Below, one piece after another: positions 24,231 to 58,944 of a DNA stretch of 64,000 nucleotides. The DNA is taken from positions 62,001 to 126,000 of IMG/VR virus record IMGVR_UViG_3300045125_000071; one strand, written 5' to 3'. A program made the position numbers and the translations under genes. The first letter of the stretch is position 1; each line of letters starts with the position of its first letter. The notes beneath the pieces were generated by a model. The model made no database searches. It saw only the letters and a program-made list of their open reading frames with translations, and had not been told where the DNA came from.

Positions 24231-25436
24231 TTATCTTTTCCTACCAAATAACCAAGAATATTCTTTATACATCTCTTTAGTGTTATTCATTGGGTTATTA
24301 GCATGAAATAAACTATCATTTGTTTGTAATGCACCTAATGGGTCCATTGTTTGTCCATATGAATAAAATGATTTATTGACTTCATATGTTCTTTCAGATA
24401 ACATCCAGGAATCAATAACCGCCTTATTAACAGAATCTGTTCTTTCCAATTGATTAAAACACAAATCACCAGCATATAATGCAACGGATAAACTCATAAT
24501 AGAGTCATCATGCGCACCTTTCATGTGGTCTGGTCTACCATTTATATAGACAAATGTATTTAATTCGTTCAATAATCTACTTGACCTGATTTGAAATCCT
24601 TTTCTTAATTGTTCCTCAAATGCTGCAATAATTTGTGTTCTTTTATTATTGAAGTTGATACCAGGAATTTTTTCTAAAGTCTTTTTGTTGTATTCCCAAA
24701 TATTTTGAGTATTGATACCGTCGATGAATAAATTTTTATAATTCATTTCTTGCAACTTTCTAGATGTTGCAATACCCATACCACCTGTAATATCTATAAC
24801 AATAAAAGCATTACCATATAAAATACCCCATTTATATGCAATAGCGGCTAAATCATCTGGCGGTATTTTTCCAATATATTCAACAACTTGTTCTCTTTCA
24901 TCAAAATCAATTATATTAATAGAGGAAAAGTCTTCACTATCCCCTCTTGATACGTCGATTCCAGCAATATATCTATGACCTTGAATTGGTTCTTTCCATT
25001 GCCAAAATGTACCTTGCATATATTTTTCTTTCGGAACTCTAATCATGTTCTTGGCAATGTTTTCCTGTACATCATTTGGTATAACACCATCACCCGAACC
25101 TAAAAAGTCACAGTTATGTGATACAATATTATTTGTAAAATATAAATGCATTTCACCTGCGTCTACAATATCATAAACATCGCTTTCATATTCGTAATCA
25201 ATTATTTTTTCAATTGTAAAATACCCATCGTGTGATTTAATTAAATCTTCTTTTTTTACATTTTTTATTAATATCTCATTACCATCGAAATCAAATATTT
25301 TGTGATTATAACTTGCTCTTAATGTTAATCCATTAGTAAAAAATATTTCTCTTGTTTTCTTTTTCAATTTTTGTATACCCAAAAAGTCAACAAACCCTTC
25401 GGGTGATAATATTTCATATTTTGTATTAAGTTTCAT
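24231..25436 (-). CDS. terL: Terminase large subunit C-terminal (nuclease) half with N-terminal IntC split-intein fragment (25113-25436, 108 aa)
   Basis: IntC ends ...YFTNNIVSHN then CDFLGSG; downstream YIAGIDVSRG, HDDSIMS nuclease motifs. Confidence 0.9.
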   Translation of the reverse strand: MKLNTKYEILSPEGFVDFLGIQKLKKKTREIFFTNGLTLRASYNHKIFDFDGNEILIKNVKKEDLIKSHDGYFTIEKIIDYEYESDVYDIVDAGEMHLYFTNNIVSHNCDFLGSGDGVIPNDVQENIAKNMIRVPKEKYMQGTFWQWKEPIQGHRYIAGIDVSRGDSEDFSSINIIDFDEREQVVEYIGKIPPDDLAAIAYKWGILYGNAFIVIDITGGMGIATSRKLQEMNYKNLFIDGINTQNIWEYNKKTLEKIPGINFNNKRTQIIAAFEEQLRKGFQIRSSRLLNELNTFVYINGRPDHMKGAHDDSIMSLSVALYAGDLCFNQLERTDSVNKAVIDSWMLSERTYEVNKSFYSYGQTMDPLGALQTNDSLFHANNPMNNTKEMYKEYSWLFGRKR

Positions 25437-36467: not shown

Positions 36468-37533
36468 ATGTATTTGGAGCCTAAAGTTTTATTCATCCTA
36501 AAAAGAAGACATGATTATAATTCAGAAAAACATATAAATGTTAATTTAAGTACTGGATTATATAATTCAGCATCATTCATGAATGATATGTTAAATGAGA
36601 ATGAGTGCTGAGTCTAACATTGTTGTTGTGCTTGATAATAATGAAATAGATAAGTATGTTACAAAATACAAGCCAACACATGTTATTATTGAAGCATTAT
36701 GGGTTGTACCAACAAAATTTCATATATTAAAAAGCTCCATCCAAACGTAATCTGGATTATAAGATTACATAGTGAAACTCTCATTTTAGCAAATGAAGGT
36801 ATTGCATTTGACTGGTTAGGTGATTATTTAACATTTGATAATGTAATTATTGCAGTAAACGCTAAAAGAATATTGAACGAATTAAGGGAATTTATAAAAA
36901 GTAAATTTCATCCTTACGTTCATATAGATTTTATTGAAAATAGAGTTATATATTTACCTAATTATTATCCACAAACATATACAATAAAAGAATTTGATAG
37001 AGAAAAAGACCATGTGGATATTTCCTGTTTTGGCGCAATCAGACCATTAAAAATCATATGGTACAAGCATTAGCTGCTCTAAAATTTGCTGAAAGTATTG
37101 ATAAAAAATTGTATTTTCACATAAATACTGGCAGAATCGAACAAAAGGGGGATTCAATTTTAACTAATTTACAATCACTTTTTCACATATTCATAATAAC
37201 GGACATAGGTTGATTAACCATGGCTGGATGCCAAGAGAAGAGTTTTTAAAGGTATGTAAAACAATAGATATTGGTATGCAGGTTTCTTTTTCAGAAACAT
37301 TCAATATTGTTGCGGCAGATTTAATTACACAAGGTGTGCCAATTGTTGGGTCTAATGAAATTCCCTGGACAACAAAATTATTTAGCACGAATCCAACTGA
37401 CAGTGATAAAATATCTGATAAACTTTATTTCACCTATAAATTCCCGAAATTGAATTTAAAAATACATAAATATTTATTAAAAAGATATACTAATAAAACC
37501 ATAAAAATATGGTTAAAATTTCTAAACAGATAA
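36468..37533 (+). CDS. Glycosyltransferase (GT4-like), fragmented
   Basis: FGAIRPLK, DIGMQVSFSETFNIVAADLITQGVPIVGS. Confidence 0.7.
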
Positions 37534-37536
37534 AAA

Positions 37537-37731
37537 ATGAACATAAAATTAAGACTTACAATTTTTGATTGGGATAATGGTGTATGGGGTAATAGAAATT
37601 ATTATTTTGCAACATTGGAAGAAGCGAAAAAAAGAATGAAAAAAGAAAAAGGTAGAGGAAAAATTTACAACATGAAAGGTCAGGTTATTCATTCTGAAAA
37701 CAACACAGGCAACAATTATTCCGAAAACTGA
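37537..37731 (+). CDS. Hypothetical protein
   Basis: 64-aa ORF. Confidence 0.5.
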   Translation: MNIKLRLTIFDWDNGVWGNRNYYFATLEEAKKRMKKEKGRGKIYNMKGQVIHSENNTGNNYSEN

Positions 37732-37735
37732 TATT

Positions 37736-38629
37736 ATGAAATTAGCCAATTTGCTAACAGAAGATAATAGTTACAAGGTATCATATTCTGGCGTTATCCT
37801 TGACGAAAATTCAAAAAAGATTTATTAAATCATGTTCAAATCCCATCTGGTTGGAAAACATATGCCCACCATATGACAATCTGTTTAGGACCCTTACCAG
37901 AAAATCTTAAAGATTTAAAAGGGAAAAAACAAACATTAAGAATAACTAAGATAGGTAAATCAGAAAAAGCAATAGCATTTGGAATTGAAACCGATTTATC
38001 ATTGAATAAAATACCTCATATTACAGTTGCCATAAATACATCTATCGGTGCGAAACCAAAAGACAGCAATGACATAACCGAATGGGAAGACATTGAACCA
38101 TTTGTTGTGTACGGACGAGTTGATGAGGTTATGGTACAACCACCATTTAGACCAAGCGGACAACCCTTAATACTAAATGTTTTGATTTTGATGGTACACT
38201 TATGGATTCACCCACACCAGAAATTGGTAAACCGTTGTATAAAGAATTAACGGGTTCTGACTGGAAATATAGAGGTTGGTGGGGACAAGTTGACAGCTTA
38301 AAACCTTTTGATGTAAAACCAATAGAGAAAACACAAAAATTGTATCACGCTTATACTTCATTACCCAACTCGGTGAGTATATTGATGACAAACAGAATAC
38401 CCAAGTTTGAACCTGTTGTCAGAGAAAAACTTAAAGATTATTATATCTTCGATTATTATGATTTCAAAATGACCATAGAGAAAAACCTGATAGGATTATG
38501 GACATTTTGAGGTTAAACCCATCAATTAAAGTAATAAATATCTTCGATGATATGGATGAACAAATCGCCAGGTTCCAAATATTCAAGGAACAACATCCAG
38601 AATATGAAGTGAATATTTATCAGATTTGA
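37736..38629 (+). CDS. RNA end-healing enzyme: 2H phosphoesterase (CPDase) plus Swiss-army-knife-type HAD phosphatase; three indels
   Basis: HHMTI and PHITVA 2H motifs; after correcting gtttt, NVFDFDGTLMDSP (HAD motif I), GWW..SL, LMTNR, IFDD. Confidence 0.75.
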
Positions 38630-38699
38630 TTGATTATCAATGAGTTATACATTTTTTAAAAAAATCTATCAAAATTCTTTTTTATAACCATTATTTCCC

Positions 38700-38744
38700 T
38701 ATATTTGTTATAGAAATGTCACAAACGACATTGTTCTTTGACAT
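38700..38744 (+). promoter_or_regulatory. Bacteroidota-type -7 promoter element plus boxA-like antiterminator
   Basis: TATATTTG at 38700-38707; GTTCTTTGACAT at 38733-38744. Confidence 0.6.
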
Positions 38745-38756
38745 AATGGTAAAGAT

Positions 38757-39047
38757 GGTCGAGTGATGAAATTGGTAGCACATGCAAGACTTATACAATT
38801 TGAGTGCACAAGAGGAAACTCTTGATGTAGAATTCCGTAAATTCGGTGAACCCTGTAAAATGGGAATACCGAGCCAAGCATCAGCAATGATGAAGGTGTA
38901 GAGACTAGACACGGAACACCTAAATCGTAAGATATGGTGAAGGTATAGTCCAGAGTACAAACACAGCAATGTGGTAGTGAAAACTATAGTACTAAGAAAA
39001 TCTTGTGGGCAGTAATGCCCGTGTGGGTTCGAACCCCACCTCGACTA
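38757..39047 (+). tRNA. trnL: tRNA-Leu(UAA), intron-containing (exons 38757-38792 and 38997-39047)
   Basis: Spliced: GGTCGAG/CTCGACT acceptor, CAAGA-CTTAAAA-TCTTG anticodon arm, long variable arm GGGCA-GTAA-TGCCC, GTGGG-TTCGAAC-CCCAC T arm. Confidence 0.92.
38793..38996 (+). mobile_element. Group I intron (204 nt, trnL/IC3-like), no ORF
   Basis: Inserted after U34, ends in G; P AAATTCGGTGAA, Q AATACCGAGCCAAG, R GTAGAGACT, S AAGGTATAGTCC; P3 TTCCGT/ACGGAA. Confidence 0.9.
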
Positions 39048-39093
39048 CAGGACGTATTTTGTACTTTTTCGTGGTATTTATTATAAAAAATAA

Positions 39094-39723
39094 ATGCCAA
39101 GAAAAGAACATGATTATCACTACATTTATAAAACAACCAATCTATTAAATGGTAATTTTTATGTTGGGATGCACTCAACAAGTGATTTAAACGATGGTTA
39201 TTTAGGTAGTGGTGTAAGAGTAACAAGGTCAATAAAAAAACATGGTAAAAAAATTTTAGTATTGAAATACTCGAATTTTTACCCAATAGAAAAGCCTTAA
39301 AAGAAAGAGAGAAAGAAATTGTAAATGAACAATTTTTACAAAATGAAAATTGTTTAAACCTCCAACCTGGAGGTGGTGGTGGGTTTGTCAATAGTAACCA
39401 CAAAGAAAAATTTTTTGAAGGTTCCAAAAAATATCAGTTTAAGACTGAAGATGCTGCAAAAGGAAAAAAGATTTTTTAGAGCGTTATTATAATGACGAAG
39501 AATTTAGAAAATATTATAAATCAAGATTAAGACCTTATAATTGGACAGGTAGAAAACATAAAGAAGAAACAAAATTCAAAATAAGTATAATCAATTCTGA
39601 AAAACAAAAGGGAGACAAAAATTCCCAATTTGGTACTTGTTGGATTACCAATGGTATAGAAAACAAGAAAATAAAAAAACAGACGAAATACCTATGGGTT
39701 GGAGATTGGGTAGAGTAGTTTAA
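39094..39723 (+). mobile_element. GIY-YIG (Seg-like) homing endonuclease gene, frameshifted
   Basis: YIYKTTN...FYVGMHST...DGYLGSG; NUMOD-type KHKEETK; C-terminal GWRLGR. Confidence 0.85.
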
Positions 39724-39815
39724 AATATCGTACTTTTTGATTAGAGCAGTTGGGTTCATCAACCCTTCGGAATGCAGACAGCGGAGATGAGCGACCCGTC
39801 TAATCATTTTTACAT

Positions 39816-39888
39816 AGTCAGGTGGCGAAATTGGCAGACGCAATGTGAAACGGTACAACTTATACTAAAGTAACATGGAGAAGTCCAC
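39816..39888 (+). ncRNA. Truncated tRNA-scaffold element (5' part only)
   Basis: 70/73 identical to 43040-43112 but lacks T arm and 3' acceptor strand. Confidence 0.75.
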
Positions 39889-40094
39889 GTACTATTAAAA
39901 TAATTAAAAACAAAAAGGTATGAAAAAATATCATTTAACAATTTTGAGAAACGATAACTATGAAACTGTTTTTGGTGAAATGAGTTCAATAGTGAGTTTC
40001 TTACTGATAGAGAAAGAAATTGGAAATAAAACCCATATATTGTATTCGCGAGAACTAACTGAGTCAGAGTGGGAATTAGTTAAGTAAAACAAAT

Positions 40095-40223
40095 AGTCAG
40101 GTGGCGGAACGGGGTATCAGATACTCTTTGGCAGACGCTAATATGCTGAGTCCTTTTGGAGCTAACATCCTTTCGCGATTGGATTAAATGGGGGACGTAT
40201 AGGTTCGAATCCTGTCCTGACTA
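40095..40223 (+). ncRNA. tRNA-scaffold RNA 1 (129 nt)
   Basis: AGTCAGG...CCTGACT-A; D loop with inserted hairpin; ATAGG-TTCGAAT-CCTGT; branched insert. Confidence 0.85.
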
Positions 40224-40401
40224 CAAAAACTATAAATCGTGGAAAAAATAAAAGTAAAATATCCTCACTTATTAAAGTTCCTAATAGGGTTTTACAAGCC
40301 TCTTTAGCTTTTTATATGATTTATCATTTTAACTTTTTACACTTAATAGGTTATTTAATTTTATTAATAAGTCTTCATAGTATTAAAATGTATAACATAA
40401 T

Positions 40402-40425
40402 CAGGTTCGAATCCTGCCCTGACTA
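40402..40425 (+). repeat. Orphan 3' half of a tRNA-scaffold element
   Basis: CAGGTTCGAATCCTGCCCTGACTA with no upstream AGTCAGG partner. Confidence 0.75.
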
Positions 40426-40441
40426 CTTAAAATTTAAAAAA

Positions 40442-40633
40442 ATGGAAAGATATAAGTGTATTCGTAATTATCCTGGTGGACCTGGAAAAGACGTGGTAGT
40501 ATACCATCCACATAAAGAAGTGGCCTATAAGGATAGATATTTCAAACAAAAGAATGAAGAAAATTCTCGTAACTATATTTTTTTTGATGAAGACTACGTA
40601 AAAAAGTTTCCGAAATATTGGAAAAAAATATAA
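40442..40633 (+). CDS. Small hypothetical protein between array elements
   Basis: ATG at 40442 after an A-rich leader. Confidence 0.5.
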   Translation: MERYKCIRNYPGGPGKDVVVYHPHKEVAYKDRYFKQKNEENSRNYIFFDEDYVKKFPKYWKKI

Positions 40634-40641
40634 TCTAAAAT

Positions 40642-40745
40642 AGTCAGGTGGCGTAGTGGTATCGCAGCACCCTCACGGTTGAGACTAACGGCTAATGGCA
40701 CTCTGTATGATAAAGCTGACGCAGGTTCGATTCCTGCCCTGACTG
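40642..40745 (+). ncRNA. tRNA-scaffold RNA 2 (104 nt)
   Basis: AGTCAGG...CCTGACT-G; GCAGG-TTCGATT-CCTGC; insert closed by CAGC/GCTG. Confidence 0.85.
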
Positions 40746-40765
40746 CTAATCATATTATCTTCTTT

Positions 40766-41249
40766 GAAACAACTGTTGGTCAACACTGAACAAGTAACAG
40801 ATAAATCAGGTATGTAGAACCTAAAATTCTATAAAAGAATGGATGGTGTCTACATTGAAATTATCTACAATCCTCAACGTCAAGGTTGGAATTAATGACG
40901 AAATATAAAGGACAAAAACCTTTGCAGCTCCCACTGCTAAAGAGATGGGTAGAAACAAGTGTAGAACTATATTATCTGTTTAGTCTCATGGTTCTAAGAC
41001 ATGAGTAGGGTTTGGGTTGACGTGTAGTTTATTGTAAGAAAACTGAGCAGTACCTTTTATACTGGTACAATTAAATTTCCCGTCTTAGAGGGCGACAGTT
41101 GTTTCTTTCTTATGTGCTTTACACTAGAGATGGTAACACAGAATGTGTGTATTGCAGTCAATAAGATGTGTGTTGTTCTCTTGAGAAAGGAATGAAGGAG
41201 TAACAAGTTTATCGTTAACACCACTGGGGACTTCTCATCCCCATTTTTT
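40766..41249 (+). ncRNA. Large structured ncRNA candidate (about 480 nt), family unassigned
   Basis: Long-range helices 40766-75/41096-105 and 40796-804/40972-80, many local hairpins, no ORF, boxA-like motif upstream, terminator 41225-41249. Confidence 0.7.
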
Positions 41250-41273
41250 CTATTCTGACTAAAAATTAAAATT

Positions 41274-41429
41274 ATGGAAAACGAATTGGAGAAGAAAGAA
41301 AAATGTAAATGTGGTAATTCACCACAAGAATTGCATACATGTCCTTATGCGGAAGATGTACAAGGGGATAGTATAACCTTGTGCAATTGTTGTTCGGATT
41401 GTGAGAATCAATGCATTGCAGACATATAA
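41274..41429 (+). CDS. Small Cys-rich protein (51 aa)
   Basis: MENELEKKEKCKCGN...HTCPYAEDV...LCNCCSDCENQC; below ORF-track cutoff. Confidence 0.6.
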   Translation: MENELEKKEKCKCGNSPQELHTCPYAEDVQGDSITLCNCCSDCENQCIADI

Positions 41430-41590
41430 AAATAGCCAGGTGGTATCAGTTGTTTCTTTTTTATGTGTTAATGTTCATATTTTCTCTTGTTCACGTAACG
41501 TGAACAAAGAAAAATAAAACAGACCCACGCTTCCCATCTCGAAGGATAATGAGAGGGAATAATACGTCCTTTAAGGTCTGTTTTTAATAT

Positions 41591-41720
41591 AGTCAGTGGC
41601 GGAATTGGTTAGACGCGGTAGAGTCCGAAAGGTTAGCACTCTATGACTGCAAGCGAAACTCTGACTGCTAACACAAAGAGGAGTATAATTGCAATGCAGG
41701 TTCGAATCCTGTCCTGACTA
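41591..41720 (+). ncRNA. tRNA-scaffold RNA 3 (130 nt)
   Basis: AGTCAG(G missing)TGGCGGAATTGGTTAGACGC...GCAGGTTCGAATCCTGTCCTGACT-A. Confidence 0.85.
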
Positions 41721-41857
41721 CCGATGGTTAAAGTCCCTACGAGTTGTGACAATTAAAACGATGTTGTCATTATCGAAAGATACCTCACCATAAAACTCTG
41801 GGCAAACTCCCCTAACAGGAAACTGAACGGGTTGACAGCTTGGAAAGACAAGCAAAT

Positions 41858-41947
41858 AGTCAGGTGACGGAATGACATCCGTTAGAAAAGGTGTGAGGGC
41901 GAACGTGGTCGGAAAGCACCTAGTAGGTTCGAATCCTGCCCTGACTG
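41858..41947 (+). ncRNA. tRNA-scaffold RNA 4 (90 nt)
   Basis: Same acceptor and T arm; D stem ACGG/CCGT; insert closed by AGGTG/CACCT. Confidence 0.85.
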
Positions 41948-42065
41948 CTGATTCAGTTTGCCCGTGGTAACGGATTGATGGGAGAAATCCTTGCAATCTT
42001 CTGTAATCAAAATCCAATTATTGTCTCACTGGTAATTGGGCTAAATGTGAGAAAAAACGGGACAT

Positions 42066-42183
42066 AGTCAGGTGGCGGAATGGTGCCAAAGTATAAAACA
42101 AAGGGCAGGACACAAAGTCACTGAACACAGAGGAGAGGTTGAGGAACTCCCATTACTTACAGGTTCGAATCCTGTCCTGACTG
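42066..42183 (+). ncRNA. tRNA-scaffold RNA 5 (118 nt)
   Basis: Same scaffold; multi-hairpin insert closed by AAGTA/TACTT. Confidence 0.85.
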
Positions 42184-42276
42184 CTAAAACAACTAAGTTG
42201 ATTAACACCAGACAGTAACAAGAGGAAGCAGCACTATACCAGTTAAAGTCTGGGATTGTTACCTCATAATCTAAGA

Positions 42277-42342
42277 TATGAGTGGTTTGGGTTAATGTAT
42301 GACAGTTTTGAACAGAGAGTGGTTCGACTCCACTATTCATAC
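42277..42342 (+). pseudogene. Degenerate tRNA-like sequence
   Basis: TATGAGT/ATTCATA acceptor and AGTGG-TTCGACT-CCACT T arm; no credible D or anticodon arm. Confidence 0.4.
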
Positions 42343-42469
42343 TCTACTTAGAAGGCAGCTTAGTTGTTTTAAACTTATACTGGTTTTTGATACCGCTTTA
42401 CCGTTAGGAACGGGTATACCCCAAAACAGAATACAAAATGGTATGACAAGCCTGGAGAGACAGGCAAAT

Positions 42470-42609
42470 AGTCAGGTGGCGGAATTGGTAGACGCAGGGT
42501 CTACCTCAAGCGATTAGAGTATACGAGACGGGTGAAAGTTCCTCATTCCAAGTTGACCACGCTTACCCTTTAAAGGCAATTATACAGGTTCGATTCCTGT
42601 CCTGGACTG
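42470..42609 (+). ncRNA. tRNA-scaffold RNA 6 (140 nt)
   Basis: Leu-type D arm GCGGAATTGGTAGACGC; insert closed by AGGGT/ACCCT; one extra G in 3' strand. Confidence 0.85.
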
Positions 42610-42722
42610 CAAAAAATTAAACATATAGTGTATATCGATAAATGCATCGTTAATTATTTTGGCGATTATGGGTATTGTGTTTTTGGGGTATTGTTACACA
42701 AAAAGGTGGATTATAAAGATAT

Positions 42723-42799
42723 AGTCAGGTGGCTGAATTGGTGACAGAGGCACACCGTTAAACGACGGGTGGATGCGGGTTCGAATCCTGTCCTGACTG
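42723..42799 (+). ncRNA. tRNA-scaffold RNA 7 (77 nt)
   Basis: tRNA-sized but anticodon-position hairpin CCGT-TAAACG-ACGG is non-canonical. Confidence 0.8.
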
Positions 42800-42885
42800 C
42801 TAGGTAAGTTGCAAGTAAATGTCGTGATTCATGAACTTACGACCACTAGAAAGGAGCTGACTGCTGGGAAACGAGACAGCACTAT

Positions 42886-42962
42886 AGTCAGGTGGTGTAA
42901 TTGGTAGCACAACATCCGACAAGGGATGGAGGAGTCTAAAGGTTCGATTCCTGTCCTGACTA
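42886..42962 (+). ncRNA. tRNA-scaffold RNA 8 (77 nt)
   Basis: CATCC-GACAAG-GGATG 6-nt loop lacking U33. Confidence 0.8.
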
Positions 42963-43039
42963 CGATTAGAGGTATAGGGGTACCCTGAGGCGAAGTACAA
43001 GCCATGGTCACTGAATGTAAACCAACTCTAAACTAATTT

Positions 43040-43140
43040 AGTCAGGTGGTGAAATTGGCAGACGCAATGTGAAACGGTACAACTTATACTAAAGTAGCTT
43101 GGAGAAGTCCACTTTACAGGTTCGAATCCTGTCCTGACTA
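43040..43140 (+). ncRNA. tRNA-scaffold RNA 9 (101 nt)
   Basis: Same scaffold; insert duplicated at 39816. Confidence 0.85.
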
Positions 43141-43157
43141 CAAAAAACAAAAAAACT

Positions 43158-43337
43158 ATGAGCAACAATTCAAGTTCCAGTGGTATTGGTTTACCAACAA
43201 TTCTTTTTATTGTATTTTTGGTATTAAAACTAACTAATTACATTGATTGGTCATGGTGGTGGGTAACTTCTCCATTATGGATTTCTGCAATATTATATAT
43301 CATTCTCATTGTTGTTATTGAGAAAATTTTTCGTTGA
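43158..43337 (+). CDS. Small membrane protein (59 aa)
   Basis: MSNNSSSSGIGLPTILFIVFLVLKL...IDWSWWWVTSPLW. Confidence 0.7.
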   Translation: MSNNSSSSGIGLPTILFIVFLVLKLTNYIDWSWWWVTSPLWISAILYIILIVVIEKIFR

Positions 43338-43355
43338 CTTTGAAAATTAAATAAA

Positions 43356-43583
43356 ATGGACTATTCGGATGCAAGAATAAAAGCATTGTATCTTAAATGG
43401 AAGACATCTACATGTGACCAAGGAGAAAAGTGTTGGTGTCGTGTGATTAAATGCGAAGAATCATTGATGTATAAGGAGTATGAAGGTGATGATGAACAAG
43501 AATACAATGTGGTGGGCCCAGGGCTATTGGACAAAGAAACTGTTGAACATATTGTCAAACTTCACAACGATTCAATTAAGTGA
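43356..43583 (+). CDS. Hypothetical protein
   Basis: 75-aa ORF with C.QGEKCWC motif. Confidence 0.55.
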   Translation: MDYSDARIKALYLKWKTSTCDQGEKCWCRVIKCEESLMYKEYEGDDEQEYNVVGPGLLDKETVEHIVKLHNDSIK

Positions 43584-43599
43584 ATCTCAAAAAACAAAC

Positions 43600-43945
43600 A
43601 TGAACAAAGTCGTAATTAACGGAAACACAGTAAGTGGTAATTTTGCTGCCGACAACCTTATTATAATTAACGGAAAGGTTTTTGTCAATGGGAAAGATGT
43701 TACACCTGATGCAAAAGAAATAAACATTACCATTCAAGGGTCTGTTGAAAAATTGGAGGTCGATGCTTGTTCAAAAATAACCATTGATGGTGATGTCCAT
43801 AATGTCACAACCAAAAGCGGTGATGTCGATATTTCGGGGAACGTTAGCGGTAATGTTCAAACCATGTCTGGGTGATGTTGATTGCGGAAATGTCAGTGGT
43901 TCGATTTCAACAATGAGTGGTGACATTAAGCACAAACATATTTAA
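43600..43945 (+). CDS. Beta-solenoid-like hypothetical protein (one indel near 43870)
   Basis: Repeating GDV/GNV..V.T.SG units. Confidence 0.6.
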
Positions 43946-43952
43946 ATAAAAC

Positions 43953-44068
43953 AGTCAGGTGGCGGAGTGGTAGACGCAGAGTTTAGGGTTACTGATGTAG
44001 ATAGGTAACTGGTCACGCAGCGAGATAGCGTACTCTTTCTATCGCAGGTTCGATTCCTGTCCTGACTA
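43953..44068 (+). ncRNA. tRNA-scaffold RNA 10 (116 nt)
   Basis: Insert closed by AGAGT/ACTCT with GTTAC/GTAAC hairpin. Confidence 0.85.
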
Positions 44069-44137
44069 CTAATCTTTTTTAACTTCAGATTAACCATAAA
44101 AAGAAAAGTTAATGACATCTTGGAAAGACAAGAAAAT

Positions 44138-44227
44138 AGTCAGGTGGCGCAAGTGTGAAGAATAATCACCATGGGTAAGCGAGCTGTGGAAACACGGAGG
44201 TTGTGGGTTCGAATCCCACCCTGACTA
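44138..44227 (+). ncRNA. tRNA-scaffold RNA 11 (90 nt)
   Basis: Compensatory T stem GTGGG/CCCAC; hairpin in D loop; anticodon position is CTGTG-GAAA-CACGG. Confidence 0.85.
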
Positions 44228-44241
44228 CAAAAATAAAACTT

Positions 44242-44394
44242 ATGAAAAAGTATAACGTCCTATTGGGTATTATTGGGTATATTTTGACAGTGTGTGTAGC
44301 GCCAGCATTGTTTATTGAAAAACATTACATATTAGCACTAATATCTTTTATAGGGGGAATTGCAGTAATCGATTATAACAGAGGTGGCAATTAA
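44242..44394 (+). CDS. Small membrane protein
   Basis: Two hydrophobic segments. Confidence 0.5.
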   Translation: MKKYNVLLGIIGYILTVCVAPALFIEKHYILALISFIGGIAVIDYNRGGN

Positions 44395-44400
44395 TTACAT

Positions 44401-44547
44401 AGTCAGGTGGCGCAATGGTAGACGCTGTAAAAGTAAGATATGGGGATTGTGCACTCGGTGTTATCCTACGCACAAGGCTTAGATAGTTTTAGCAAAAACG
44501 GAAAGTCTTACAAAACTATTATACAGGTTCGAATCCTGTCCTGACTG
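44401..44547 (+). ncRNA. tRNA-scaffold RNA 12 (147 nt, longest)
   Basis: Same scaffold; branched insert. Confidence 0.85.
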
Positions 44548-44562
44548 CAAAAAATTAAAAAT

Positions 44563-44778
44563 ATGAAACAACCTAAAATACAAATTACGGACATCCACGG
44601 AGAAGATTGGGGTGTTAAAAAAGTCACACATCTTGGTTGGAATATTAATGGAAACTTAGTCGAAATAAAAGTTGACTTTATGGGTAATTATTACGACTTG
44701 ATGGTAATGTATGATATTGATTGTACTGGTACATTTACCAATATTCATGGTAACTTAAAAGGTAAACTAATTTTTTGA
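44563..44778 (+). CDS. Hypothetical protein
   Basis: 71-aa ORF between elements. Confidence 0.55.
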   Translation: MKQPKIQITDIHGEDWGVKKVTHLGWNINGNLVEIKVDFMGNYYDLMVMYDIDCTGTFTNIHGNLKGKLIF

Positions 44779-44788
44779 ATAAAAAAAC

Positions 44789-44895
44789 AGTCAGGTGGCG
44801 GAATGGTAGACGTAGAATCGGAAACCTAATGAGGTAGTGAACGAAAGATTTGGATAACTGCGGTTATCGTACAGGTTCGATTCCTGTCCTGACTG
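44789..44895 (+). ncRNA. tRNA-scaffold RNA 13 (107 nt)
   Basis: Variable-arm-like GATAAC-TGCG-GTTATC; anticodon arm replaced. Confidence 0.85.
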
Positions 44896-44909
44896 CAAAA
44901 AGGAAAAGT

Positions 44910-45173
44910 ATGATACTTTGGAAGTGGCAAAATGGAAGACAACATAATTGCGAATATCAGAAGTTCCCACTATGGTATTTTAAGTTATGGAAGTTTGGGT
45001 TTGATTGTTACATTCTCAGTTATAATGAGAACCAAACATTACCCAAACATAAAGACCCTATTGTGAATGGAAAACACTGGAGATTGAATATCGGATATGG
45101 TAATTCAAATTTTCTTTGTGAAAAATTAATTTTTGGTAAAAAAGATTGGATTATTATCCGTATATTTGTTTAG
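44910..45173 (+). CDS. 2OG-Fe(II) oxygenase-like small protein (3' end frameshifted)
   Basis: Y......LPKHKDP....HWRLNI (HxD motif). Confidence 0.45.
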   Translation: MILWKWQNGRQHNCEYQKFPLWYFKLWKFGFDCYILSYNENQTLPKHKDPIVNGKHWRLNIGYGNSNFLCEKLIFGKKDWIIIRIFV

Positions 45174-45258
45174 GCCTGATTTATATGAACATTCCCTTCA
45201 TATAATTGGGAAAACAAGAAAACTCTCTATTGGGTTTGCAAAGTATATGTAAGTAAAT

Positions 45259-45374
45259 GGTCAGGTGGCGAAATAGAGCAGACGCATGATGATAAAGTAG
45301 GGTCCGAATGTACTCGGAGGAAATTGATTCAATTAGGTTGCAAACTAATATAGGTTCGAATCCTGTCCTGACTA
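45259..45374 (+). ncRNA. tRNA-scaffold RNA 14 (116 nt)
   Basis: GGTCAGG/CCTGACT; three-hairpin insert (TCCGA/TCGGA, AATTG/CAATT, ATTAG/CTAAT). Confidence 0.85.
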
Positions 45375-45491
45375 CGAGGGAAATAATCTTAACCAGCCTC
45401 AAATGTTGAATCTTGTTGACCATTCCTGGTTTATACAAGTGCGAACGGGCCTAATGATGGTAAGGTTGACAGCGGGGAAAGACCCGACCAT

Positions 45492-45577
45492 GGTCAAGTA
45501 GCTTATAATGGGTATATGGGTATTAACTCTTCCTTTAAGTAGGTTTAGCATTGTGGGTTCAAATCCCATCTTGACCG
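45492..45577 (+). ncRNA. Divergent tRNA-like element (86 nt)
   Basis: GGTCAAG/CTTGACC acceptor, GTGGG-TTCAAAT-CCCAT T arm, no canonical anticodon arm. Confidence 0.65.
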
Positions 45578-45591
45578 CAAAATAAAATGTT

Positions 45592-46206
45592 ATGAAAAGC
45601 AAGACAGTGGAACGCATCATGGGAGAAATGGAAAAAGACCCGTGGTATGTCAAACTAAGAAGGTGGTGGAATCTGAAGGTGTGGACATGGAAATGTTTAT
45701 CCAGGAAATATTGGGACAAAACACATTCTGGTTATATCTTTAGAAAAAGAATCATGATTTCAAAAGAAACATTGGAAGCAGTTCGGGTTGGAATACTAAC
45801 GGACAAGCAATTGAATGAAGCAATTGAACACTATACTAAGTTAGAAGAACTTCTAAGATGTCATGGAGAAGTATATTCTCTTGTATGGAGCAATGTTTTT
45901 TATATACTTCATACGCTTGAAGGATATCAAACATCAAGAAAAAAGAGGGTTGATTGGGAAGGGATATACAATAACCTGATGGTGGAGGTAGTATATCTGG
46001 AGTTTGGAATCATCATAGTAATGCCAATCGTAAAAGGAGTTGTCCACGGAACCATCTTCTCCTTTCCTTTTTCATATAAAACAATTATTATGTTTTCAAA
46101 AACAAGAGTCAAGTTCAGACTTAAAGGAAGTGACGAAATCCAATTGGGGTTTTTGGAAAAAAATAAAGAATACAAAAAACAAATATCGTGTTTTATCCAT
46201 GGATAA
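45592..46206 (+). CDS. Hypothetical ORF(s); probably several small genes read through
   Basis: 204-aa ORF with internal ATG-led segments. Confidence 0.35.
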   Translation: MKSKTVERIMGEMEKDPWYVKLRRWWNLKVWTWKCLSRKYWDKTHSGYIFRKRIMISKETLEAVRVGILTDKQLNEAIEHYTKLEELLRCHGEVYSLVWSNVFYILHTLEGYQTSRKKRVDWEGIYNNLMVEVVYLEFGIIIVMPIVKGVVHGTIFSFPFSYKTIIMFSKTRVKFRLKGSDEIQLGFLEKNKEYKKQISCFIHG

Positions 46207-46270
46207 AAAATCTGGATATTGTATTTCTTTGTTAGATATGTTGGAAAAATTTAAATATTTAATAGAACAT

Positions 46271-46345
46271 AGTCAGGGTGGCTGAATGGCAACGGCAGTT
46301 CACGAGGTGTTACGAAGAATGCAGGTTTGAATCCTGTCCTGACTG
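46271..46345 (+). ncRNA. tRNA-scaffold RNA 15 (75 nt)
   Basis: AGTCAGG/CCTGACT-G; T loop TTTGAAT; non-canonical central hairpin. Confidence 0.8.
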
Positions 46346-49552: not shown

Positions 49553-49625
49553 GCGGCCATGATGTAATGGATTAGCATGAAAAACTTCTAATTTTTCCGT
49601 ACAGGTTCGAATCCTGTTGGCCGTA
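49553..49625 (+). tRNA. tRNA-Arg(UCU)
   Basis: GCGGCCA/TGGCCGT acceptor; AAAAA-CTTCTAA-TTTTT; ACAGG-TTCGAAT-CCTGT. Confidence 0.9.
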
Positions 49626-49702
49626 CAAAATTTTTATTACTTTTGGTTCGATTCATGATATTGGTATAATTTAAAATAAATTCGAGTTTTGTTGGGGGCT
49701 AT

Positions 49703-50383
49703 GTGACTTTTTTAAATTTTGACCATACTTATAATAAGTATGGCAAATTTAAACACAAAAAAAAGTATCATTTTATTTACAAAACAACAAATTTAAAAAC
49801 TGGTCATTTTTATATTGGGATGCACTCAACCAATAATTTAAATGATGGTTATTTGGGTAGTGGTAAAAGATTAACACGTTCCATAAGAAAGTATGGTAAA
49901 GAAAATTTTAAATTAGACATTTTGGAATTTTTACCAGATAGAAAAACATTAGAATTAAAAGAAAAAGAATTAGTCAATGAAGAACAATTAAAAGACCCAT
50001 TATGCATGAATATATGCGTTGGGGGTCAAGGTGGTTTCATATCAATAGAAGGATGCACTAAAGGTGGTGTAATCGCAGCAAAAATTCATGTTGATAGAAT
50101 AAAAAATGATTCAGAATATAGGGAAAAACATATATTGAGGTTTAGTGAAAAAGTAAAAAAACTTTGGAGAGATGGTGTTCTTAAACAACACGATTTTAGA
50201 GGTGGAAAACGGAAAGAAGAAACTAAAAGAAAAATAAGTGAAACAAATAAAATAAAACAAAAAGGAATTTTAAATTCACAATTTGGAACTCGATGGATTA
50301 CTGATGGTTCTGAAAATAAAAAAATAAAAAATACCGAGACAATACCAAATGGATGGGTCTTAGGTAGAAAAATGAAAAAATAA
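49703..50383 (+). mobile_element. GIY-YIG (Seg-like) homing endonuclease, paralogue of 39094
   Basis: FIYKTTN...FYIGMHST...DGYLGSG...GGQGG...GWVLGR. Confidence 0.88.
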
Positions 50384-53129: not shown

Positions 53130-53975
53130 AATGGGCGGTCTATAGTCCAGTAATGACTCGAAAGAGTTGTTATAAAAATAAACTATGAAAGTAGTATAAA
53201 GTGGTCTCCTTGGTTAAAAGAGACTGCGGTTTATCGCAAGATGAACTTGAGTAGAAAAGCGAGACATCGTTTGACCCGTAGTAGCGAGGGTAACACTGTA
53301 GTGAAAGGGGTTGAATGACTGGGCGATGTGGGTCGTCTGGTTGAGGTGGGAACACCAATAAGAGTAACTCGTAGGGTAGTTGCAAGAAATATGGTCATCC
53401 AACTATATGATTGCGGTATCCAATACAATGGGTGTCTTAAAGTTGAAAGACATGATGAAAAACAGGTGGTGCTGTTATCATCCTTAGTTAGAATCTACCA
53501 AGGTTCTGATTATGAAGAAATCCAAAAGTATGGAGGTAGGGATATCTCAGAGAGTAGTTGTGTATTTTGCGGTTCAAAAGACTGTGAAGCACTGGTGACG
53601 GACCACTACTTTCAAAATCCACAAACCAAAAACTGTTACTTTTGACTAACAAGTTTAAAAAAGCAGGAAAAGTGTCCGTCAGTCATCAGAGACAGGTGGC
53701 TACTCAGTAACGAGTTGTTCGTTGCCACAAAGGGTCCCAAGCCCAATGTGATTTTTGTGAAAGTTCTCTAATCCCGCAAGGATGAGTTGGTGAGGCATCA
53801 TCGAAGAGCAGCGATTAGCAAGAGAGTATCTGGTGACTCAAGGATTGGTTAATCTAATTGACCGCCATTGATTGGTACTACTCAAAAGGTAGTGGATAAG
53901 AAGAGAACCTCAAAAGGGATAATGCTTCGAAAGTCAATCACAAGAACTTGTAATCTCAGAGTTTTTACTTTAATT
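53130..53975 (+). ncRNA. Giant structured ncRNA (about 850 nt), probably GOLLD-like
   Basis: Own promoter and terminator; GGCGGTC(53134-40)/GACCGCC(53860-66) long-range helix; numerous hairpins; phage tRNA-island context. The family name is inference from size and context. Confidence 0.65.
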
Positions 53976-58941: not shown

Positions 58942-58944
58942 CTC

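What the first reader, a model, noticed from the sequence alone, without database searches (positions are those of the whole stretch)
38757..39723. Phage tRNA-Leu(UAA) with a self-splicing group I intron next to a free-standing GIY-YIG nuclease
Seen: a 204-nt ORF-less intron after U34 with recognisable P/Q/R/S elements; splicing restores a perfect anticodon arm. A GIY-YIG gene begins 46 nt downstream. Known: this insertion site is the classic cyanobacterial/plastid trnL(UAA) site, while described phage group I introns are mostly in protein genes. Inference: possible collaborative homing, with the nuclease cutting intron-less trnL alleles. This tRNA also resembles the array scaffold and may be its ancestor.
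Basis: partly seen in the sequence, partly recalled or inferred. Interest (0 to 1): 0.62.

Follow-up and report, generated by a model that had tools for sequence, protein, structure and literature searches.

The report
Self-splicing intron in phage tRNA-Leu
A large freshwater-type phage carries a leucine tRNA gene split by a small self-splicing RNA intron of the kind known from bacterial tRNA genes, with a SegB-like mobile nuclease gene beside it. A 2014 review knew of no such intron in any phage tRNA gene, yet I found relatives in dozens of phage contigs.

Summary
Window 38757-39047 is a class II tRNA-Leu(UAA) gene. It is split after U34 by a 204-nt ORF-less group I intron (38793-38996).

- **Relatives.** 22 other distinct phage pre-tRNAs carry a homologous intron at the same site (36 IMG/VR contigs, Agrobacterium phage Atu_ph07, the 735-kb phage LR756501).
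- **Fold.** In the alignment, 99% of pair cells are canonical and 24 of 51 intron pairs show compensatory changes. The anticodon stem pairs and covaries across the intron.
- **Type.** The intron is the IC3 type of bacterial tRNA introns. It has a U.G pair at the 5' splice site, a terminal G, a P3/P7 pseudoknot and GAAA loops at L2 and L9.
- **The nuclease gene.** The gene 46 nt downstream (39094-39723) is a full-length GIY-YIG homing endonuclease. In this assembly it is broken by three -1 shifts in homopolymer runs, which are probably assembly errors. Through its intact paralogue it is kin to T4-type SegB, which lives in phage tRNA clusters and cuts inside tRNA genes.
- **Collaborative homing is not supported.** The other intron-bearing loci, including the closest relative, have no such nuclease next to the tRNA. 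Homologous nucleases sit beside intron-less tRNAs, including an intron-less tRNA-Leu(UAA) of nearly the same sequence.

Verdict: a new member of a known kind in a host context that a 2014 review says was unknown.

The parts
38757..38792 (+). tRNA-Leu(UAA) exon 1: acceptor 5' strand, D arm, anticodon stem 5' strand, C32 U33 U34
   Evidence: Read directly. 7/7 acceptor pairs. Stems covary in 23 sequences. The same 23 nt occur in the intron-less genes L166-L170, which ARAGORN calls tRNA-Leu(taa).
38793..38996 (+). ORF-less group I intron, IC3 type, 204 nt, ending in the terminal G at 38996
   Evidence: Rfam RF00028, 41.2 bits, E 9.5e-9. nhmmer with the family profile, E 2.3e-54, single copy in the genome. 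51 intron pairs are 99% canonical, 24 with compensatory changes, against 30-41% and 5-9 in slid controls.
38790..38804 (+). P1: CUUA (38790-38793) pairs with UGAG (38801-38804); U38792.G38802 wobble at the 5' splice site
   Evidence: RNAalifold on A3; all four pairs invariant in 23 sequences.
38805..38829 (+). P2 hairpin with GAAA tetraloop (L2, 38815-38818)
   Evidence: The seven inner pairs (alignment columns 57-63) show compensatory changes; the loop GAAA is invariant.
38833..38916 (+). P3 (UUCCGU 38833-38838 with ACGGAA 38911-38916), enclosing P4 (38842-38848 / 38867-38873), P5 (38851-38853 / 38862-38864), P6 hairpin (38874-38898) and the 5' strand of P7 (GACUA 38903-38907)
   Evidence: P3: all six pairs have compensatory changes. 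P4 is invariant. The P6 hairpin is kept in all 23 with differing sequence.
38917..38950 (+). P8 (CACC 38917-38920 with GGUG 38936-38939) and the 3' strand of P7 (UAGUC 38946-38950); P7 crosses P3 to form the pseudoknot
   Evidence: P7 is paired in 23/23, with an A-U to U-A swap in 12 of 23. P8 covaries.
38954..38993 (+). Closing helix AGUAC/GUACU (38954-38958 / 38989-38993) around the P9 hairpin (38962-38973) and the P9a hairpin with GAAA loop (38974-38987)
   Evidence: The window alone has G38955/C38992 where the other 22 have C/G, a compensatory double change in this lineage.
38997..39047 (+). tRNA-Leu(UAA) exon 2: A35 A36 A37 A38, anticodon stem 3' strand, 17-nt variable arm (GGGCA-GUAA-UGCCC), T arm, acceptor 3' strand, discriminator A39047; no encoded CCA
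   Evidence: Read directly. The anticodon stem pairs across the intron and covaries. A CCA-adding enzyme is encoded at 56043-57515.
39094..39252 (+). GIY-YIG homing endonuclease, piece 1 (catalytic motifs YIY...YVG, R, H)
   Evidence: PHROG 314 homing endonuclease, E 6.5e-16. 66% identical to the intact paralogue over residues 1-67.
39249..39470 (+). Endonuclease piece 2, frame -1 relative to piece 1; break in the A7 run 39247-39253
   Evidence: PHROG 314, E 4.7e-12. 49% identical to the paralogue. A contig from another metagenome (X1, record 6) covers 39119-39275 with no mismatch and one extra letter.
39464..39679 (+). Endonuclease piece 3, frame -1 again; break in the A6/T6 runs 39464-39477; weak NUMOD3-like motif
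   Evidence: 56% identical to the paralogue. NUMOD3 17.0 bits against a cut-off of 20.4.
39673..39723 (+). Endonuclease piece 4 (C-terminal IPxGWxLGR) and stop codon; break in the A7 run 39673-39679
   Evidence: 56% identical to the paralogue's C-terminus. Contig X2 record 16 covers 39510-39732 with one extra letter.
49703..50383 (+). Intact paralogue of the endonuclease (226 aa), about 80 nt after tRNA-Arg(UCU) at 49553-49626; used as the full-length reference
   Evidence: SegE_GIY-YIG 24.3 bits, GIY-YIG 21.4 bits; about 41% identity over 87% of its length to T4-type SegB.

Best explanation
**What it is.** A jumbo phage (a 251-kb IMG/VR record; head, portal and terminase genes lie in the same window) encodes its only detectable tRNA-Leu. 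The anticodon is UAA, and UUA plus UUG make up 72% of the phage's leucine codons. The gene is split between U34 and A35 by a 204-nt IC3 group I intron.

**How the intron most likely works (inferred from the family's known chemistry).**
- The precursor folds into P1-P9.
- A free guanosine attacks after U38792, which sits in the conserved U.G pair of P1.
- The terminal G38996 then enters the P7 pocket and the exons are ligated, giving the anticodon loop CUUAAAA.
- CCA is added afterwards; the phage encodes a CCA-adding enzyme.

**The neighbouring gene.** It is a SegB-like free-standing GIY-YIG homing endonuclease, probably intact in the real phage, since its three breaks are -1 shifts in homopolymer runs. 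It most likely does what SegB does: it cuts tRNA-region DNA of co-infecting relatives that lack it and is copied in by repair. Its start lies only 98 nt from the 3' splice site, so the intron could be carried along in the repair tract. Nothing indicates that the enzyme recognises the intron insertion site.

**Shown:** the sequences, the fold conservation, homology and gene contexts. **Inferred:** splicing, endonuclease activity and its target.
For: **tRNA and intron.**
- Anatomy read directly.
- Rfam Intron_gpI covers the full model, E 9.5e-9. Homologues pass the gathering score.
- 36 IMG/VR contigs plus Atu_ph07 and LR756501 carry the same intron at the same site.
- RNAalifold recovers the tRNA stems, including the anticodon stem across the intron, and P1-P5, P8, P9. 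P6 and P7 were checked separately.
- 99% of intron pair cells are canonical, against 30-41% in slid controls.
- The window has its own compensatory double change at 38955/38992.

**Context.**
- Phage hallmark genes and a CCA-adding enzyme.
- Only one intron copy and no other tRNA-Leu in the genome.
- Codon usage.

**Endonuclease.**
- PHROG 314.
- The four pieces tile the intact paralogue.
- SegB homology and SegB's place inside a tRNA cluster.
- SegB cuts inside tRNA genes and often lies within 1 kb of tRNAs (PMC13096335).

**Breaks as errors.**
- Contigs from other metagenomes have one extra letter across two of the three breaks.
- A neighbouring gene (36483-37557) is in one frame in L027/L030 but split over three frames here.
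Against: - No RNA evidence of splicing for this phage. No public run holds the source (largest share of words 0.09), and the RNA contigs laid belong to relatives and show no joint.
- The window's intron scores below Rfam's gathering score (41.2 against 50).
- ARAGORN does not call the interrupted gene.
- The endonuclease is not an open frame in the sequence as given. The position of the extra letter in the other contigs was not printed, so repair of the frame is inferred.
- The endonuclease's Pfam GIY-YIG scores, taken on the paralogue, are just under the cut-offs.
- Its target is unknown. With 41% identity, its specificity may differ from SegB's.
Confidence: 0.75

Rival explanations
1. Collaborative (trans) homing. 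The free-standing GIY-YIG enzyme recognises the intron-less tRNA-Leu(UAA) anticodon region. The intron splits that site and protects the phage's own genome, and the two elements spread together.
For: - The nuclease gene starts 46 nt after the tRNA.
- Intron-less alleles with an identical 23-nt D/anticodon 5' half exist in other phage contigs (L166-L170) and in a freshwater run (X1 record 1).
- Collaborative homing is documented for two phages, and an intron-encoded enzyme specific for a tRNA anticodon region is known (PMC3984707).
Against: - None of the 37 other intron-bearing loci searched by tblastn has a homologue adjacent; one, L031, has a copy 5 kb away.
- 143 flanking ORFs from 20 distinct loci give only 2 HNH_3 and 1 Endonuclease_7 hits.
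- The nearest relative, L040 (93% core identity), has the intron without the nuclease.
- L170 carries an intact homologue 1 kb from an intron-less tRNA-Leu(UAA) of nearly the same sequence.
- The in-genome paralogue follows an intron-less tRNA-Arg.
- SegB's mapped sites are T-loop-like motifs, not anticodon loops.
Confidence: 0.1
2. The nuclease gene is a real pseudogene. The intron and tRNA still work, but the neighbouring homing endonuclease has decayed after fixation, as the homing-cycle model expects.
For: There are three frameshifts in the assembly as given. Decay of homing endonuclease genes after fixation is well known (general knowledge of the homing cycle).
Against: - All three breaks are -1 shifts in runs of 6-7 A or T.
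- There are no in-frame stops, and the pieces are 49-66% identical to the paralogue over the full length.
- Two independent contigs from other metagenomes have one extra letter across two of the break regions.
- Another gene in the window shows the same kind of breaks where relatives have one frame.
Confidence: 0.12
3. The intron is a decayed relic and the tRNA gene is dead. No mature tRNA-Leu(UAA) is made, and the phage relies on the host tRNA.
For: The Rfam score is below the gathering score. There is no transcript evidence.
Against: - Every helix of the family consensus is intact in the window.
- Only six near-invariant columns differ. Two of them are a compensatory pair, and one is shared with the intron-less alleles L166-L170, which ARAGORN calls tRNA-Leu.
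- The U.G pair, the terminal G and both GAAA loops are kept.
- It is the only tRNA-Leu in a genome where UUA and UUG are 72% of leucine codons.
- Bona fide bacterial tRNA-Leu introns also score 45 bits.
Confidence: 0.04

Closest known systems
IC3 group I introns of bacterial tRNA genes: tRNA-Leu(UAA) of cyanobacteria and plastids, and Azoarcus tRNA-Ile(CAU)
   Same: - Same insertion point for Leu(UAA), between U34 and A35.
- Same small ORF-less architecture (about 200 nt): P1-P9, no P5abc, GAAA loops at L2 and L9.
- Same core strings (AAAUUCGG..., GAGCCAAG, GAAGGUGUAGAGACU, AGUCC).
- The exons pair in the anticodon stem.
- The core pattern occurs in at least 120 bacterial genomes, and at least 44 of these loci are tRNA-Leu(UAA).
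   Different: - The host gene is phage-encoded.
- In a poorly resolved tree (138 columns), the phage tRNA(UAA) introns group with betaproteobacterial tRNA-Ile(CAU) introns and a Pelagibacter-phage capsid-gene intron, not with most bacterial tRNA-Leu introns (SH-aLRT 97).
- Some phage hosts are 73-nt class I tRNAs.
Group I introns in phage protein-coding genes (here HTVC120P capsid and crAss-like cr116_1 DNA polymerase; classically T4 td, nrdB, sunY)
   Same: The same ribozyme core. HTVC120P matches the window over intron positions 100-252 of the query at 79% identity.
   Different: Those interrupt protein genes, and many carry their own endonuclease ORF. This one interrupts a tRNA and has no ORF. 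The 2014 review states that all phage introns known then were in protein genes.
SegB of T4-like phages (a free-standing GIY-YIG homing endonuclease in the tRNA cluster)
   Same: - GIY-YIG N-terminal domain plus a NUMOD-like C-terminus.
- About 41% identity over 87% of the paralogue.
- The gene sits between tRNA genes, and that cluster also holds tRNA-Leu(UAA) and tRNA-Arg(UCU).
   Different: Activity and target are untested here. The copy beside tRNA-Leu is frameshifted in this assembly. T4-like tRNA genes have no introns.
Collaborative homing pairs (an ORF-less intron plus a free-standing endonuclease aimed at the intron insertion site; T3/phiI-type DNA polymerase and cyanophage psbA)
   Same: An ORF-less intron with a free-standing endonuclease gene next to the interrupted gene.
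   Different: The pairing is not conserved among relatives, and homologous endonucleases coexist with intron-less alleles. The defining coincidence of cleavage site and insertion site could not be tested.

Membership tests
Group I intron (Rfam RF00028) | Match to the curated covariance model at or above the gathering score (50 bits) | tested here: inconclusive
   The window scores 41.2 bits over the full model, E 9.5e-9, and is not listed at gathering. Homologues L040 (61.0), L006 (57.8), cyanobacterial L047 (64.8) and Polynucleobacter L044 (54.5) pass. Bacterial tRNA-Leu introns L042 (44.9) and L120 (45.4) also fall short.
Group I intron (Rfam RF00028) | P1 helix with a U.G wobble at the 5' splice site, and a terminal G at the 3' end | tested here: met
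   U38792.G38802, and G38996. Both are invariant in 23 sequences.
Group I intron (Rfam RF00028) | Conserved core P3-P8 with the P3/P7 pseudoknot, supported by covariation | tested here: met
   51 pairs are 99% canonical, 24 with compensatory changes; slid controls give 30-41%. P7 is paired in 23/23 with an A-U/U-A swap.
Group I intron (Rfam RF00028) | Guanosine-dependent self-splicing | not testable with these tools
   Needs in vitro transcription and splicing, or RNA from infected cells. No run holds this phage.
IC3 tRNA introns | Insertion in the anticodon loop, with the exons pairing as the anticodon stem | tested here: met
   The intron lies between U34 and A35. CAAGA (38785-38789) pairs with UCUUG (39001-39005), and three of the five pairs (alignment columns 29-31) show compensatory changes.
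IC3 tRNA introns | Compact architecture without P5abc, with tetraloops at L2 and L9 | tested here: met
   204 nt. P5 is a 3-bp hairpin. GAAA at 38815-38818 and 38979-38982 is invariant in the alignment. That these loops define IC3 contacts comes from my own knowledge of the Azoarcus structure.
IC3 tRNA introns | Sequence homology of the core to bacterial tRNA introns | tested here: met
   The pattern GAGCCAAG...GAAGGTGNAGAGACTNGAC is found in at least 120 bacterial genomes. Most hits are in tRNA genes and at least 44 are tRNA-Leu(UAA).
tRNA-Leu, class II | Cloverleaf with a long variable arm, anticodon UAA and discriminator A | tested here: met
   Read from the exons. 20 tRNA pairs are 99.8% canonical in 23 sequences, 16 with compensatory changes. 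The variable arm is GGGCA-GUAA-UGCCC.
tRNA-Leu, class II | Called by a tRNA finder | tested here: inconclusive
   ARAGORN, with or without its intron option, does not call the interrupted gene; it looks for introns at 37/38. Natural intron-less genes with the same 5' half are called tRNA-Leu(taa) (L170 2818-2904, L166 1764-1851). The joined exons were not submitted to any tool.
tRNA-Leu, class II | Charged by leucyl-tRNA synthetase | not testable with these tools
   Biochemical.
GIY-YIG / SegB-like homing endonuclease | GIY-YIG catalytic domain | tested here: inconclusive
   The gene's pieces hit PHROG 314 'homing endonuclease' (E 6.5e-16 and 4.7e-12), but no Pfam GIY-YIG model. The paralogue at 49703 scores GIY-YIG 21.4 (cut-off 22.6) and SegE_GIY-YIG 24.3 (cut-off 25). 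The paralogue at 13144 scores SegE_GIY-YIG 25.8, above the cut-off. The motifs YIY...YVG, R, H and E are visible in the translation.
GIY-YIG / SegB-like homing endonuclease | Homology to SegB and a free-standing position among tRNA genes | tested here: met
   699 phage records match, the best about 41% identical over 87%. The hit in phage e11/2 is annotated SegB and lies between tRNA-Met and tRNA-Arg. Here the copies follow tRNA-Leu and tRNA-Arg.
GIY-YIG / SegB-like homing endonuclease | Uninterrupted open reading frame | tested here: not met
   There are three -1 shifts at 39247-39253, 39464-39477 and 39673-39679. They are probably assembly errors, but that is unproven.
Collaborative homing pair | The endonuclease cleaves the intron-less allele at the intron insertion site | not testable with these tools
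   Needs a cleavage assay.
Collaborative homing pair | The intron and the endonuclease travel together in relatives | tested here: not met
   no adjacent homologue in 37 other loci searched by tblastn. L040 has the intron only. L170 has the endonuclease with an intron-less tRNA-Leu.

The most novel reading that the evidence does not exclude
Phage-encoded tRNA genes host a widespread, so far unannotated lineage of IC3 group I introns. It is present in at least 36 IMG/VR contigs, the cultured jumbo phage Atu_ph07 and the 735-kb phage LR756501. Closely related tRNA-Leu(UAA) genes differ in whether they carry it, and it also occurs in 73-nt class I tRNAs with the same anticodon loop. This would mean the intron moves between phage tRNA genes that share the CUU/AAAA loop, by reverse splicing or by being carried in the repair tracts of SegB-like endonucleases. 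It would overturn the statement that phage group I introns occur only in protein genes.
Probability: 0.45. Interest if true: 0.62.

Novelty: new member of a known kind. Interest (0 to 1): 0.52.

Why it matters
- **A gap in the record.** Group I introns in bacterial tRNA genes and in phage protein genes are both textbook cases. A 2014 review noted that no phage tRNA gene was known to carry one, although phages encode many tRNAs (PMC3984707). The paper searches I ran found no later report.
- **tRNA counts in phages.** Standard tRNA finders miss these genes. ARAGORN finds 5 tRNAs in this 251-kb phage and not this one. Atu_ph07's record annotates a hypothetical protein over the 3' exon. tRNA inventories of large phages are therefore undercounted.
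- **A way to study intron gain and loss.** Closely related phage tRNA-Leu genes with and without the intron give a natural system for this.
- **A direct test is possible.** Atu_ph07 is cultured, so splicing can be tested in vivo.
- **A mobile neighbourhood.** The SegB-like nuclease beside the gene ties the locus to recent work showing that SegB reshapes phage tRNA clusters.

Tried and rejected
- **ARAGORN with introns allowed (0-400 nt)** on 38601-39200 found nothing. It expects introns at 37/38.
- **The genome search with RF00028 on the phage's own genome** reported no match, although cmscan finds the intron. I used nhmmer with a family profile instead.
- **cmscan of L001-L004 at E 0.01** found nothing, probably because of the filters on a larger input.
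- **Two first attempts to cut intron cores by regular expressions** were too strict and dropped most or all phage rows. This was fixed.
- **The intron tree** has only 138 usable columns and most forks are unresolved. I draw only a weak grouping from it.
- **The look-up of sequencing runs** found no run holding the phage (best share 0.09). The frameshifts and splicing could therefore not be checked on reads. Read laying showed only contigs of relatives, and the position of the extra letter in two contigs was not listed.
- **A PDB sequence search with the paralogue** gave only irrelevant designed 'Pizza' proteins.
- **Pfam on the three longer endonuclease pieces** gave nothing above threshold. 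One search failed because the fourth piece was too short.
- **The hairpin after the nuclease gene (39738-39805)** folds only modestly better than shuffles (z -2.1). The consensus scan found no terminator.
- **The T6 SegB motif RAWTSGAAC** is enriched in the window (19 against 6.9 expected). It is simply the T loop of the tRNA-like units, so it is no evidence of cleavage.
The cloverleaf was checked on the unspliced alignment and on natural intron-less homologues.
- **Not used because not needed:** the large protein searches, structure prediction and complex prediction.
Full report
**Setting.** The window is bases 62001-126000 of a 251,358-base virus record (IMG/VR type, linear, estimated 75% complete). 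The genome is 31% G+C. PHROG scans show it is a tailed phage:
- major head protein, 17145-18863
- portal, 22424-23893
- a terminase large-subunit match, 24231-25436
- a CCA-adding tRNA nucleotidyltransferase, 56043-57515

The same window holds a GOLLD RNA, a tmRNA and many tRNA-like units.

**The observation.** Read directly, 38757-38792 is the 5' half of a class II tRNA ending C32 U33 U34. The 3' half is 38997-39047, which starts A35 A36 A37 A38 and ends with discriminator A. Between them lie 204 nt (38793-38996) that start AUAC and end AAG. The exons give:
- a 7-bp acceptor stem, GGUCGAG/CUCGACU
- a 3-bp D stem
- the anticodon stem CAAGA/UCUUG
- the loop CUUAAAA, anticodon UAA
- a 17-nt variable arm, GGGCA-GUAA-UGCCC
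- a T arm

Rfam's group I model aligns over its whole length to 38787-38976 at 41.2 bits (E 9.5e-9 for the stretch searched). That is under the 50-bit gathering score, so the intron is absent from the gathering-level scan. ARAGORN does not call the gene, with or without its intron option. I did not build or submit the joined exons. The cloverleaf was tested on the unspliced alignment and on natural intron-less homologues, described below.

**Relatives.** A blastn search of GenBank phages found the same interrupted gene in the 735-kb uncultured phage LR756501 and in Agrobacterium phage Atu_ph07. It found the same ribozyme core inside the capsid gene of Pelagibacter phage HTVC120P and the DNA polymerase gene of a crAss-like phage. 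In Atu_ph07 the gene is not annotated: a 'hypothetical protein' is drawn over the 3' exon, and the genome paper does not mention introns. A pattern spanning P1 to P4 found 36 IMG/VR contigs. All but one (L005, which has no simple 3' splice-site match and is unresolved) show a tRNA with 7/7 acceptor pairs, a 5' exon ending CUU, an intron of 196-215 nt and a 3' exon starting AAAA. Atu_ph07 also appears among them, with a 278-nt intron. Together with the window and the GenBank phages they give 23 distinct precursors (alignment A3).

**Fold.** Given only A3, RNAalifold returned the following:
- the acceptor, D and T stems
- the anticodon stem pairing across the intron
- P1, with the invariant U.G at the splice site
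- P2, P3, P4, P5 and P8
- a closing helix and two P9 hairpins

39 of its 69 pairs have compensatory changes. P7, which crosses P3 and cannot be predicted by that program, is GACUA/UAGUC. It is paired in 23 of 23 sequences, with an A-U to U-A swap in about half. The P6 hairpin is kept in all sequences with different letters. Over 51 intron pairs, 99.0% of cells are canonical and 24 pairs have double changes. With the 3' partners slid by 1-3 columns the figures are 30-41% and 5-9 pairs. The 20 tRNA pairs are 99.8% canonical, 16 with double changes. L2 and L9a are invariant GAAA loops. The window differs from near-invariant columns at only six places. Two of them (G38955, C38992) are a compensatory pair unique to this phage, which argues that the helix is under selection in this lineage.

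**Which kind of group I intron.** Its features are those of the IC3 introns of bacterial tRNA genes. That assignment rests partly on my own knowledge of the Azoarcus and Anabaena introns. The features are:
- size of about 200 nt
- no P5abc
- the two GAAA loops
- the core strings AAAUUCGG, GAGCCAAG, GAAGGUGUAGAGACU and AGUCC

At least 44 of them are tRNA-Leu(UAA) genes interrupted at the same point, in Alpha- and Betaproteobacteria, Acidobacteriota, Bacteroidia and cyanobacteria. The site is therefore not confined to cyanobacteria and plastids. Calibration of the Rfam score gives cyanobacterial L047 64.8 bits, Polynucleobacter tRNA-Ile(CAU) L044 54.5, phage L040 61.0 and L006 57.8, but bacterial tRNA-Leu L042 44.9 and L120 45.4. 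The window's 41.2 bits lies just under that range. In a tree of the P4-P7 core (138 columns, most forks open), the window's nearest row is L040, at 93% identity. The phage tRNA(UAA) introns fall with the HTVC120P capsid intron and betaproteobacterial tRNA-Ile(CAU) introns in a set with SH-aLRT 97. I treat this as a weak hint only.

**Is the tRNA needed?** A family profile finds a single intron copy in the genome (E 2.3e-54). ARAGORN finds five tRNAs, none of them Leu. In long open frames, UUA is 54% and UUG 19% of leucine codons. The gene encodes no CCA, and the phage has its own CCA-adding enzyme.

**Intron-less alleles.** A 23-nt exon-1 pattern (searched exon by exon, not joined) found five more IMG/VR contigs in which the same D arm and anticodon 5' half run straight into AAAAU[CU]UUG without an intron. 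The shared stretch includes the extra C38779 that the other intron hosts lack. ARAGORN calls these tRNA-Leu(taa): L170 2818-2904 and L166 1764-1851. A freshwater run also has a contig identical over 38763-38793 that continues directly into exon-2-like sequence (X1 record 1). The run's type is only guessed as DNA. Closely related phage tRNA-Leu genes therefore differ in whether the intron is present.

**The neighbouring gene.** From the ATG at 39094, four frame pieces (39094-39252, 39249-39470, 39464-39679, 39673-39720 plus stop) tile an intact 226-aa paralogue at 49703-50383 from end to end, at 66, 49, 56 and 56% identity. Each break is a -1 shift inside a run of A or T: A7 at 39247-39253, A6/T6 at 39464-39477 and A7 at 39673-39679. 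There are no in-frame stops otherwise. Pieces 1 and 2 hit PHROG 314 'homing endonuclease'. The paralogues score at or just under Pfam's GIY-YIG and SegE_GIY-YIG cut-offs. The motifs YIY...YVG, R, H and E are readable. Two points suggest the breaks are assembly errors:
- Contigs from two other metagenomes cover 39119-39275 (no mismatch) and 39510-39732, each with one extra letter. The exact place of the extra letter was not printed.
- A neighbouring gene (36483-37557) matches a single frame in L027 and L030 but is spread over three frames here.

The genome holds four copies of this nuclease family. Two are in the tRNA region, after tRNA-Leu and after tRNA-Arg(UCU).

**What the nuclease resembles.** A tblastn search of GenBank phages gives 699 records. 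The best are T4-like phages, at about 41% identity over 87% of the paralogue. In phage e11/2 the matching gene is annotated SegB. It lies inside the tRNA cluster between tRNA-Met and tRNA-Arg(UCU), and that cluster also holds tRNA-Leu(UAA). A 2026 paper (PMC13096335) reports that:
- SegB makes breaks inside tRNA genes at a motif RAWTSGAAC, which is the T-loop sequence;
- it lies within 1 kb of tRNAs in many phages;
- it drives segmental amplification of tRNA loci.

The earlier work it cites showed that SegB promotes inheritance of the T4 tRNA region in mixed infections. The motif is common in this window's tRNA-like units, as any T loop would be. It is absent from this tRNA-Leu, whose T loop has C39034 where all 22 other intron hosts have T. 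I note this as a lead and not as evidence.

- tblastn with the nuclease pieces and paralogues against the 40 loci from the first round (L001-L040), which include the intron-bearing ones, finds a homologue only in L031, 5 kb from the tRNA.
- Pfam scans of 143 ORFs within 1.5 kb of the tRNA in 20 distinct loci give two HNH_3 hits, one Endonuclease_7 hit and no GIY-YIG.
- L040, the closest relative, has a small ORF, an ordinary tRNA and array units downstream of the tRNA-Leu, and no nuclease.
- L170 carries an intact 219-aa homologue. It is 61% identical to piece 1 and sits 51 nt after tRNA-Asp, in a cluster whose intron-less tRNA-Leu(UAA) lies 1 kb upstream.

The nuclease family therefore goes with phage tRNA clusters and not with the intron. 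What remains plausible is passive linkage. The nuclease's start is 98 nt from the 3' splice site, so repair tracts that copy the nuclease gene into a naive genome could also carry the intron. That is inference.

[quoted passage not shown] It also describes collaborative homing. Seven full-text searches (an eighth call, 57, failed on a too-short term) and the papers I read on jumbo phages, crAss-like phages and Atu_ph07 gave no report of a group I intron in a phage tRNA gene. Subscription journals are not covered, so an existing report cannot be excluded.

**Verdict.** The intron is a regular IC3 tRNA intron in an unusual host, a phage tRNA gene, and it is one of many such cases that standard annotation misses. 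The nuclease is a SegB-like free-standing homing endonuclease typical of phage tRNA clusters. Collaborative homing is possible but gets no comparative support. The claim that this tRNA is the ancestor of the neighbouring array cannot be tested from 28-nt similarities in generic tRNA parts.

Noticed in passing
window 39816-46345: An array of at least 16 tRNA-like units share one acceptor stem (GTCAGG/CCTGAC) and one T arm (GGTTCGAWTCC) but have different middles; units are 77-130 nt. Rfam calls several of them tRNA at 104-116 nt. A 74-nt 5' piece at 39815-39888, right after the nuclease gene, is 96% identical to 43039-43112. The same kind of array follows the tRNA-Leu in L040. Two SegB-like nucleases lie in or beside it, and SegB is reported to amplify tRNA loci, so nuclease-driven amplification is worth testing.
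   Followed up: partly
window 53550-53962, 58545-58944 and 56043-57515: The window holds a GOLLD RNA (307.7 bits), a phage-encoded tmRNA (85.5 bits) and a CCA-adding enzyme (PHROG 2244, E 7e-65), all within 20 kb of the tRNA region. L006, another intron-bearing contig, also carries a tmRNA (118.6 bits).
   Followed up: no
window 36468-37533 (and 39094-39723): A gene that is one open frame in L027 (653-1747) and L030 is spread over three frames here. Together with the three -1 shifts in the nuclease gene, this suggests that homopolymer runs are under-called across this assembly, so other broken genes in the window should be read with caution.
   Followed up: partly
L007 5025-5294, L012 2628-2896, L017 1379-1647, L020 12693-12961, L023 1069-1343, L029 653-927: Six of the 23 distinct intron hosts are 73-nt class I tRNAs (variable loop of 5 nt) with anticodon UAA and a Leu-like D loop. 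Bacterial tRNA-Leu is normally class II, so their identity and charging are open questions. The same intron in two tRNA classes hints at transfer between genes that share the CUU/AAAA loop, or at loss of the variable arm.
   Followed up: no
L041-L160 (genome contigs): The IC3 core pattern occurs in at least 120 bacterial and a few archaeal-labelled genomes. At least 44 are tRNA-Leu(UAA) interrupted at U34/A35, in Alpha- and Betaproteobacteria, Acidobacteriota and Bacteroidia. That is much wider than the cyanobacterial and plastid distribution usually quoted.
   Followed up: partly
L170 2370-7883 and L166 1674-2126: L170 has a 13-tRNA cluster with an intron-less tRNA-Leu(UAA), an intact SegB-like nuclease (3928-4587) and a tRNA that ARAGORN reads as a UAA suppressor (anticodon tta, 7095-7166). 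L166 has five tandem tRNA-Leu genes, including two with anticodon UAA.
   Followed up: no
L036 about 700-950: There is a second group I intron core of the same family in the same IMG/VR contig as an intron-bearing tRNA(UAA). It is not in a tRNA(UAA) context.
   Followed up: no
window 38730-38744 and L040 3107-3119: A shared motif, GTTCTTTGACATA, lies upstream of the tRNA-Leu in both the window and its closest relative, at different distances from the gene. It may be a promoter element.
   Followed up: no
window 38824-38962 (read laying, runs X7 and X9): Freshwater metatranscriptome assemblies hold contigs of related intron cores (13 differences) at word depth 215-265, much higher than other contigs laid. 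Related intron or precursor RNAs may be abundant in lakes, but contigs cannot show splicing, and DNA carry-over is not excluded.
   Followed up: no
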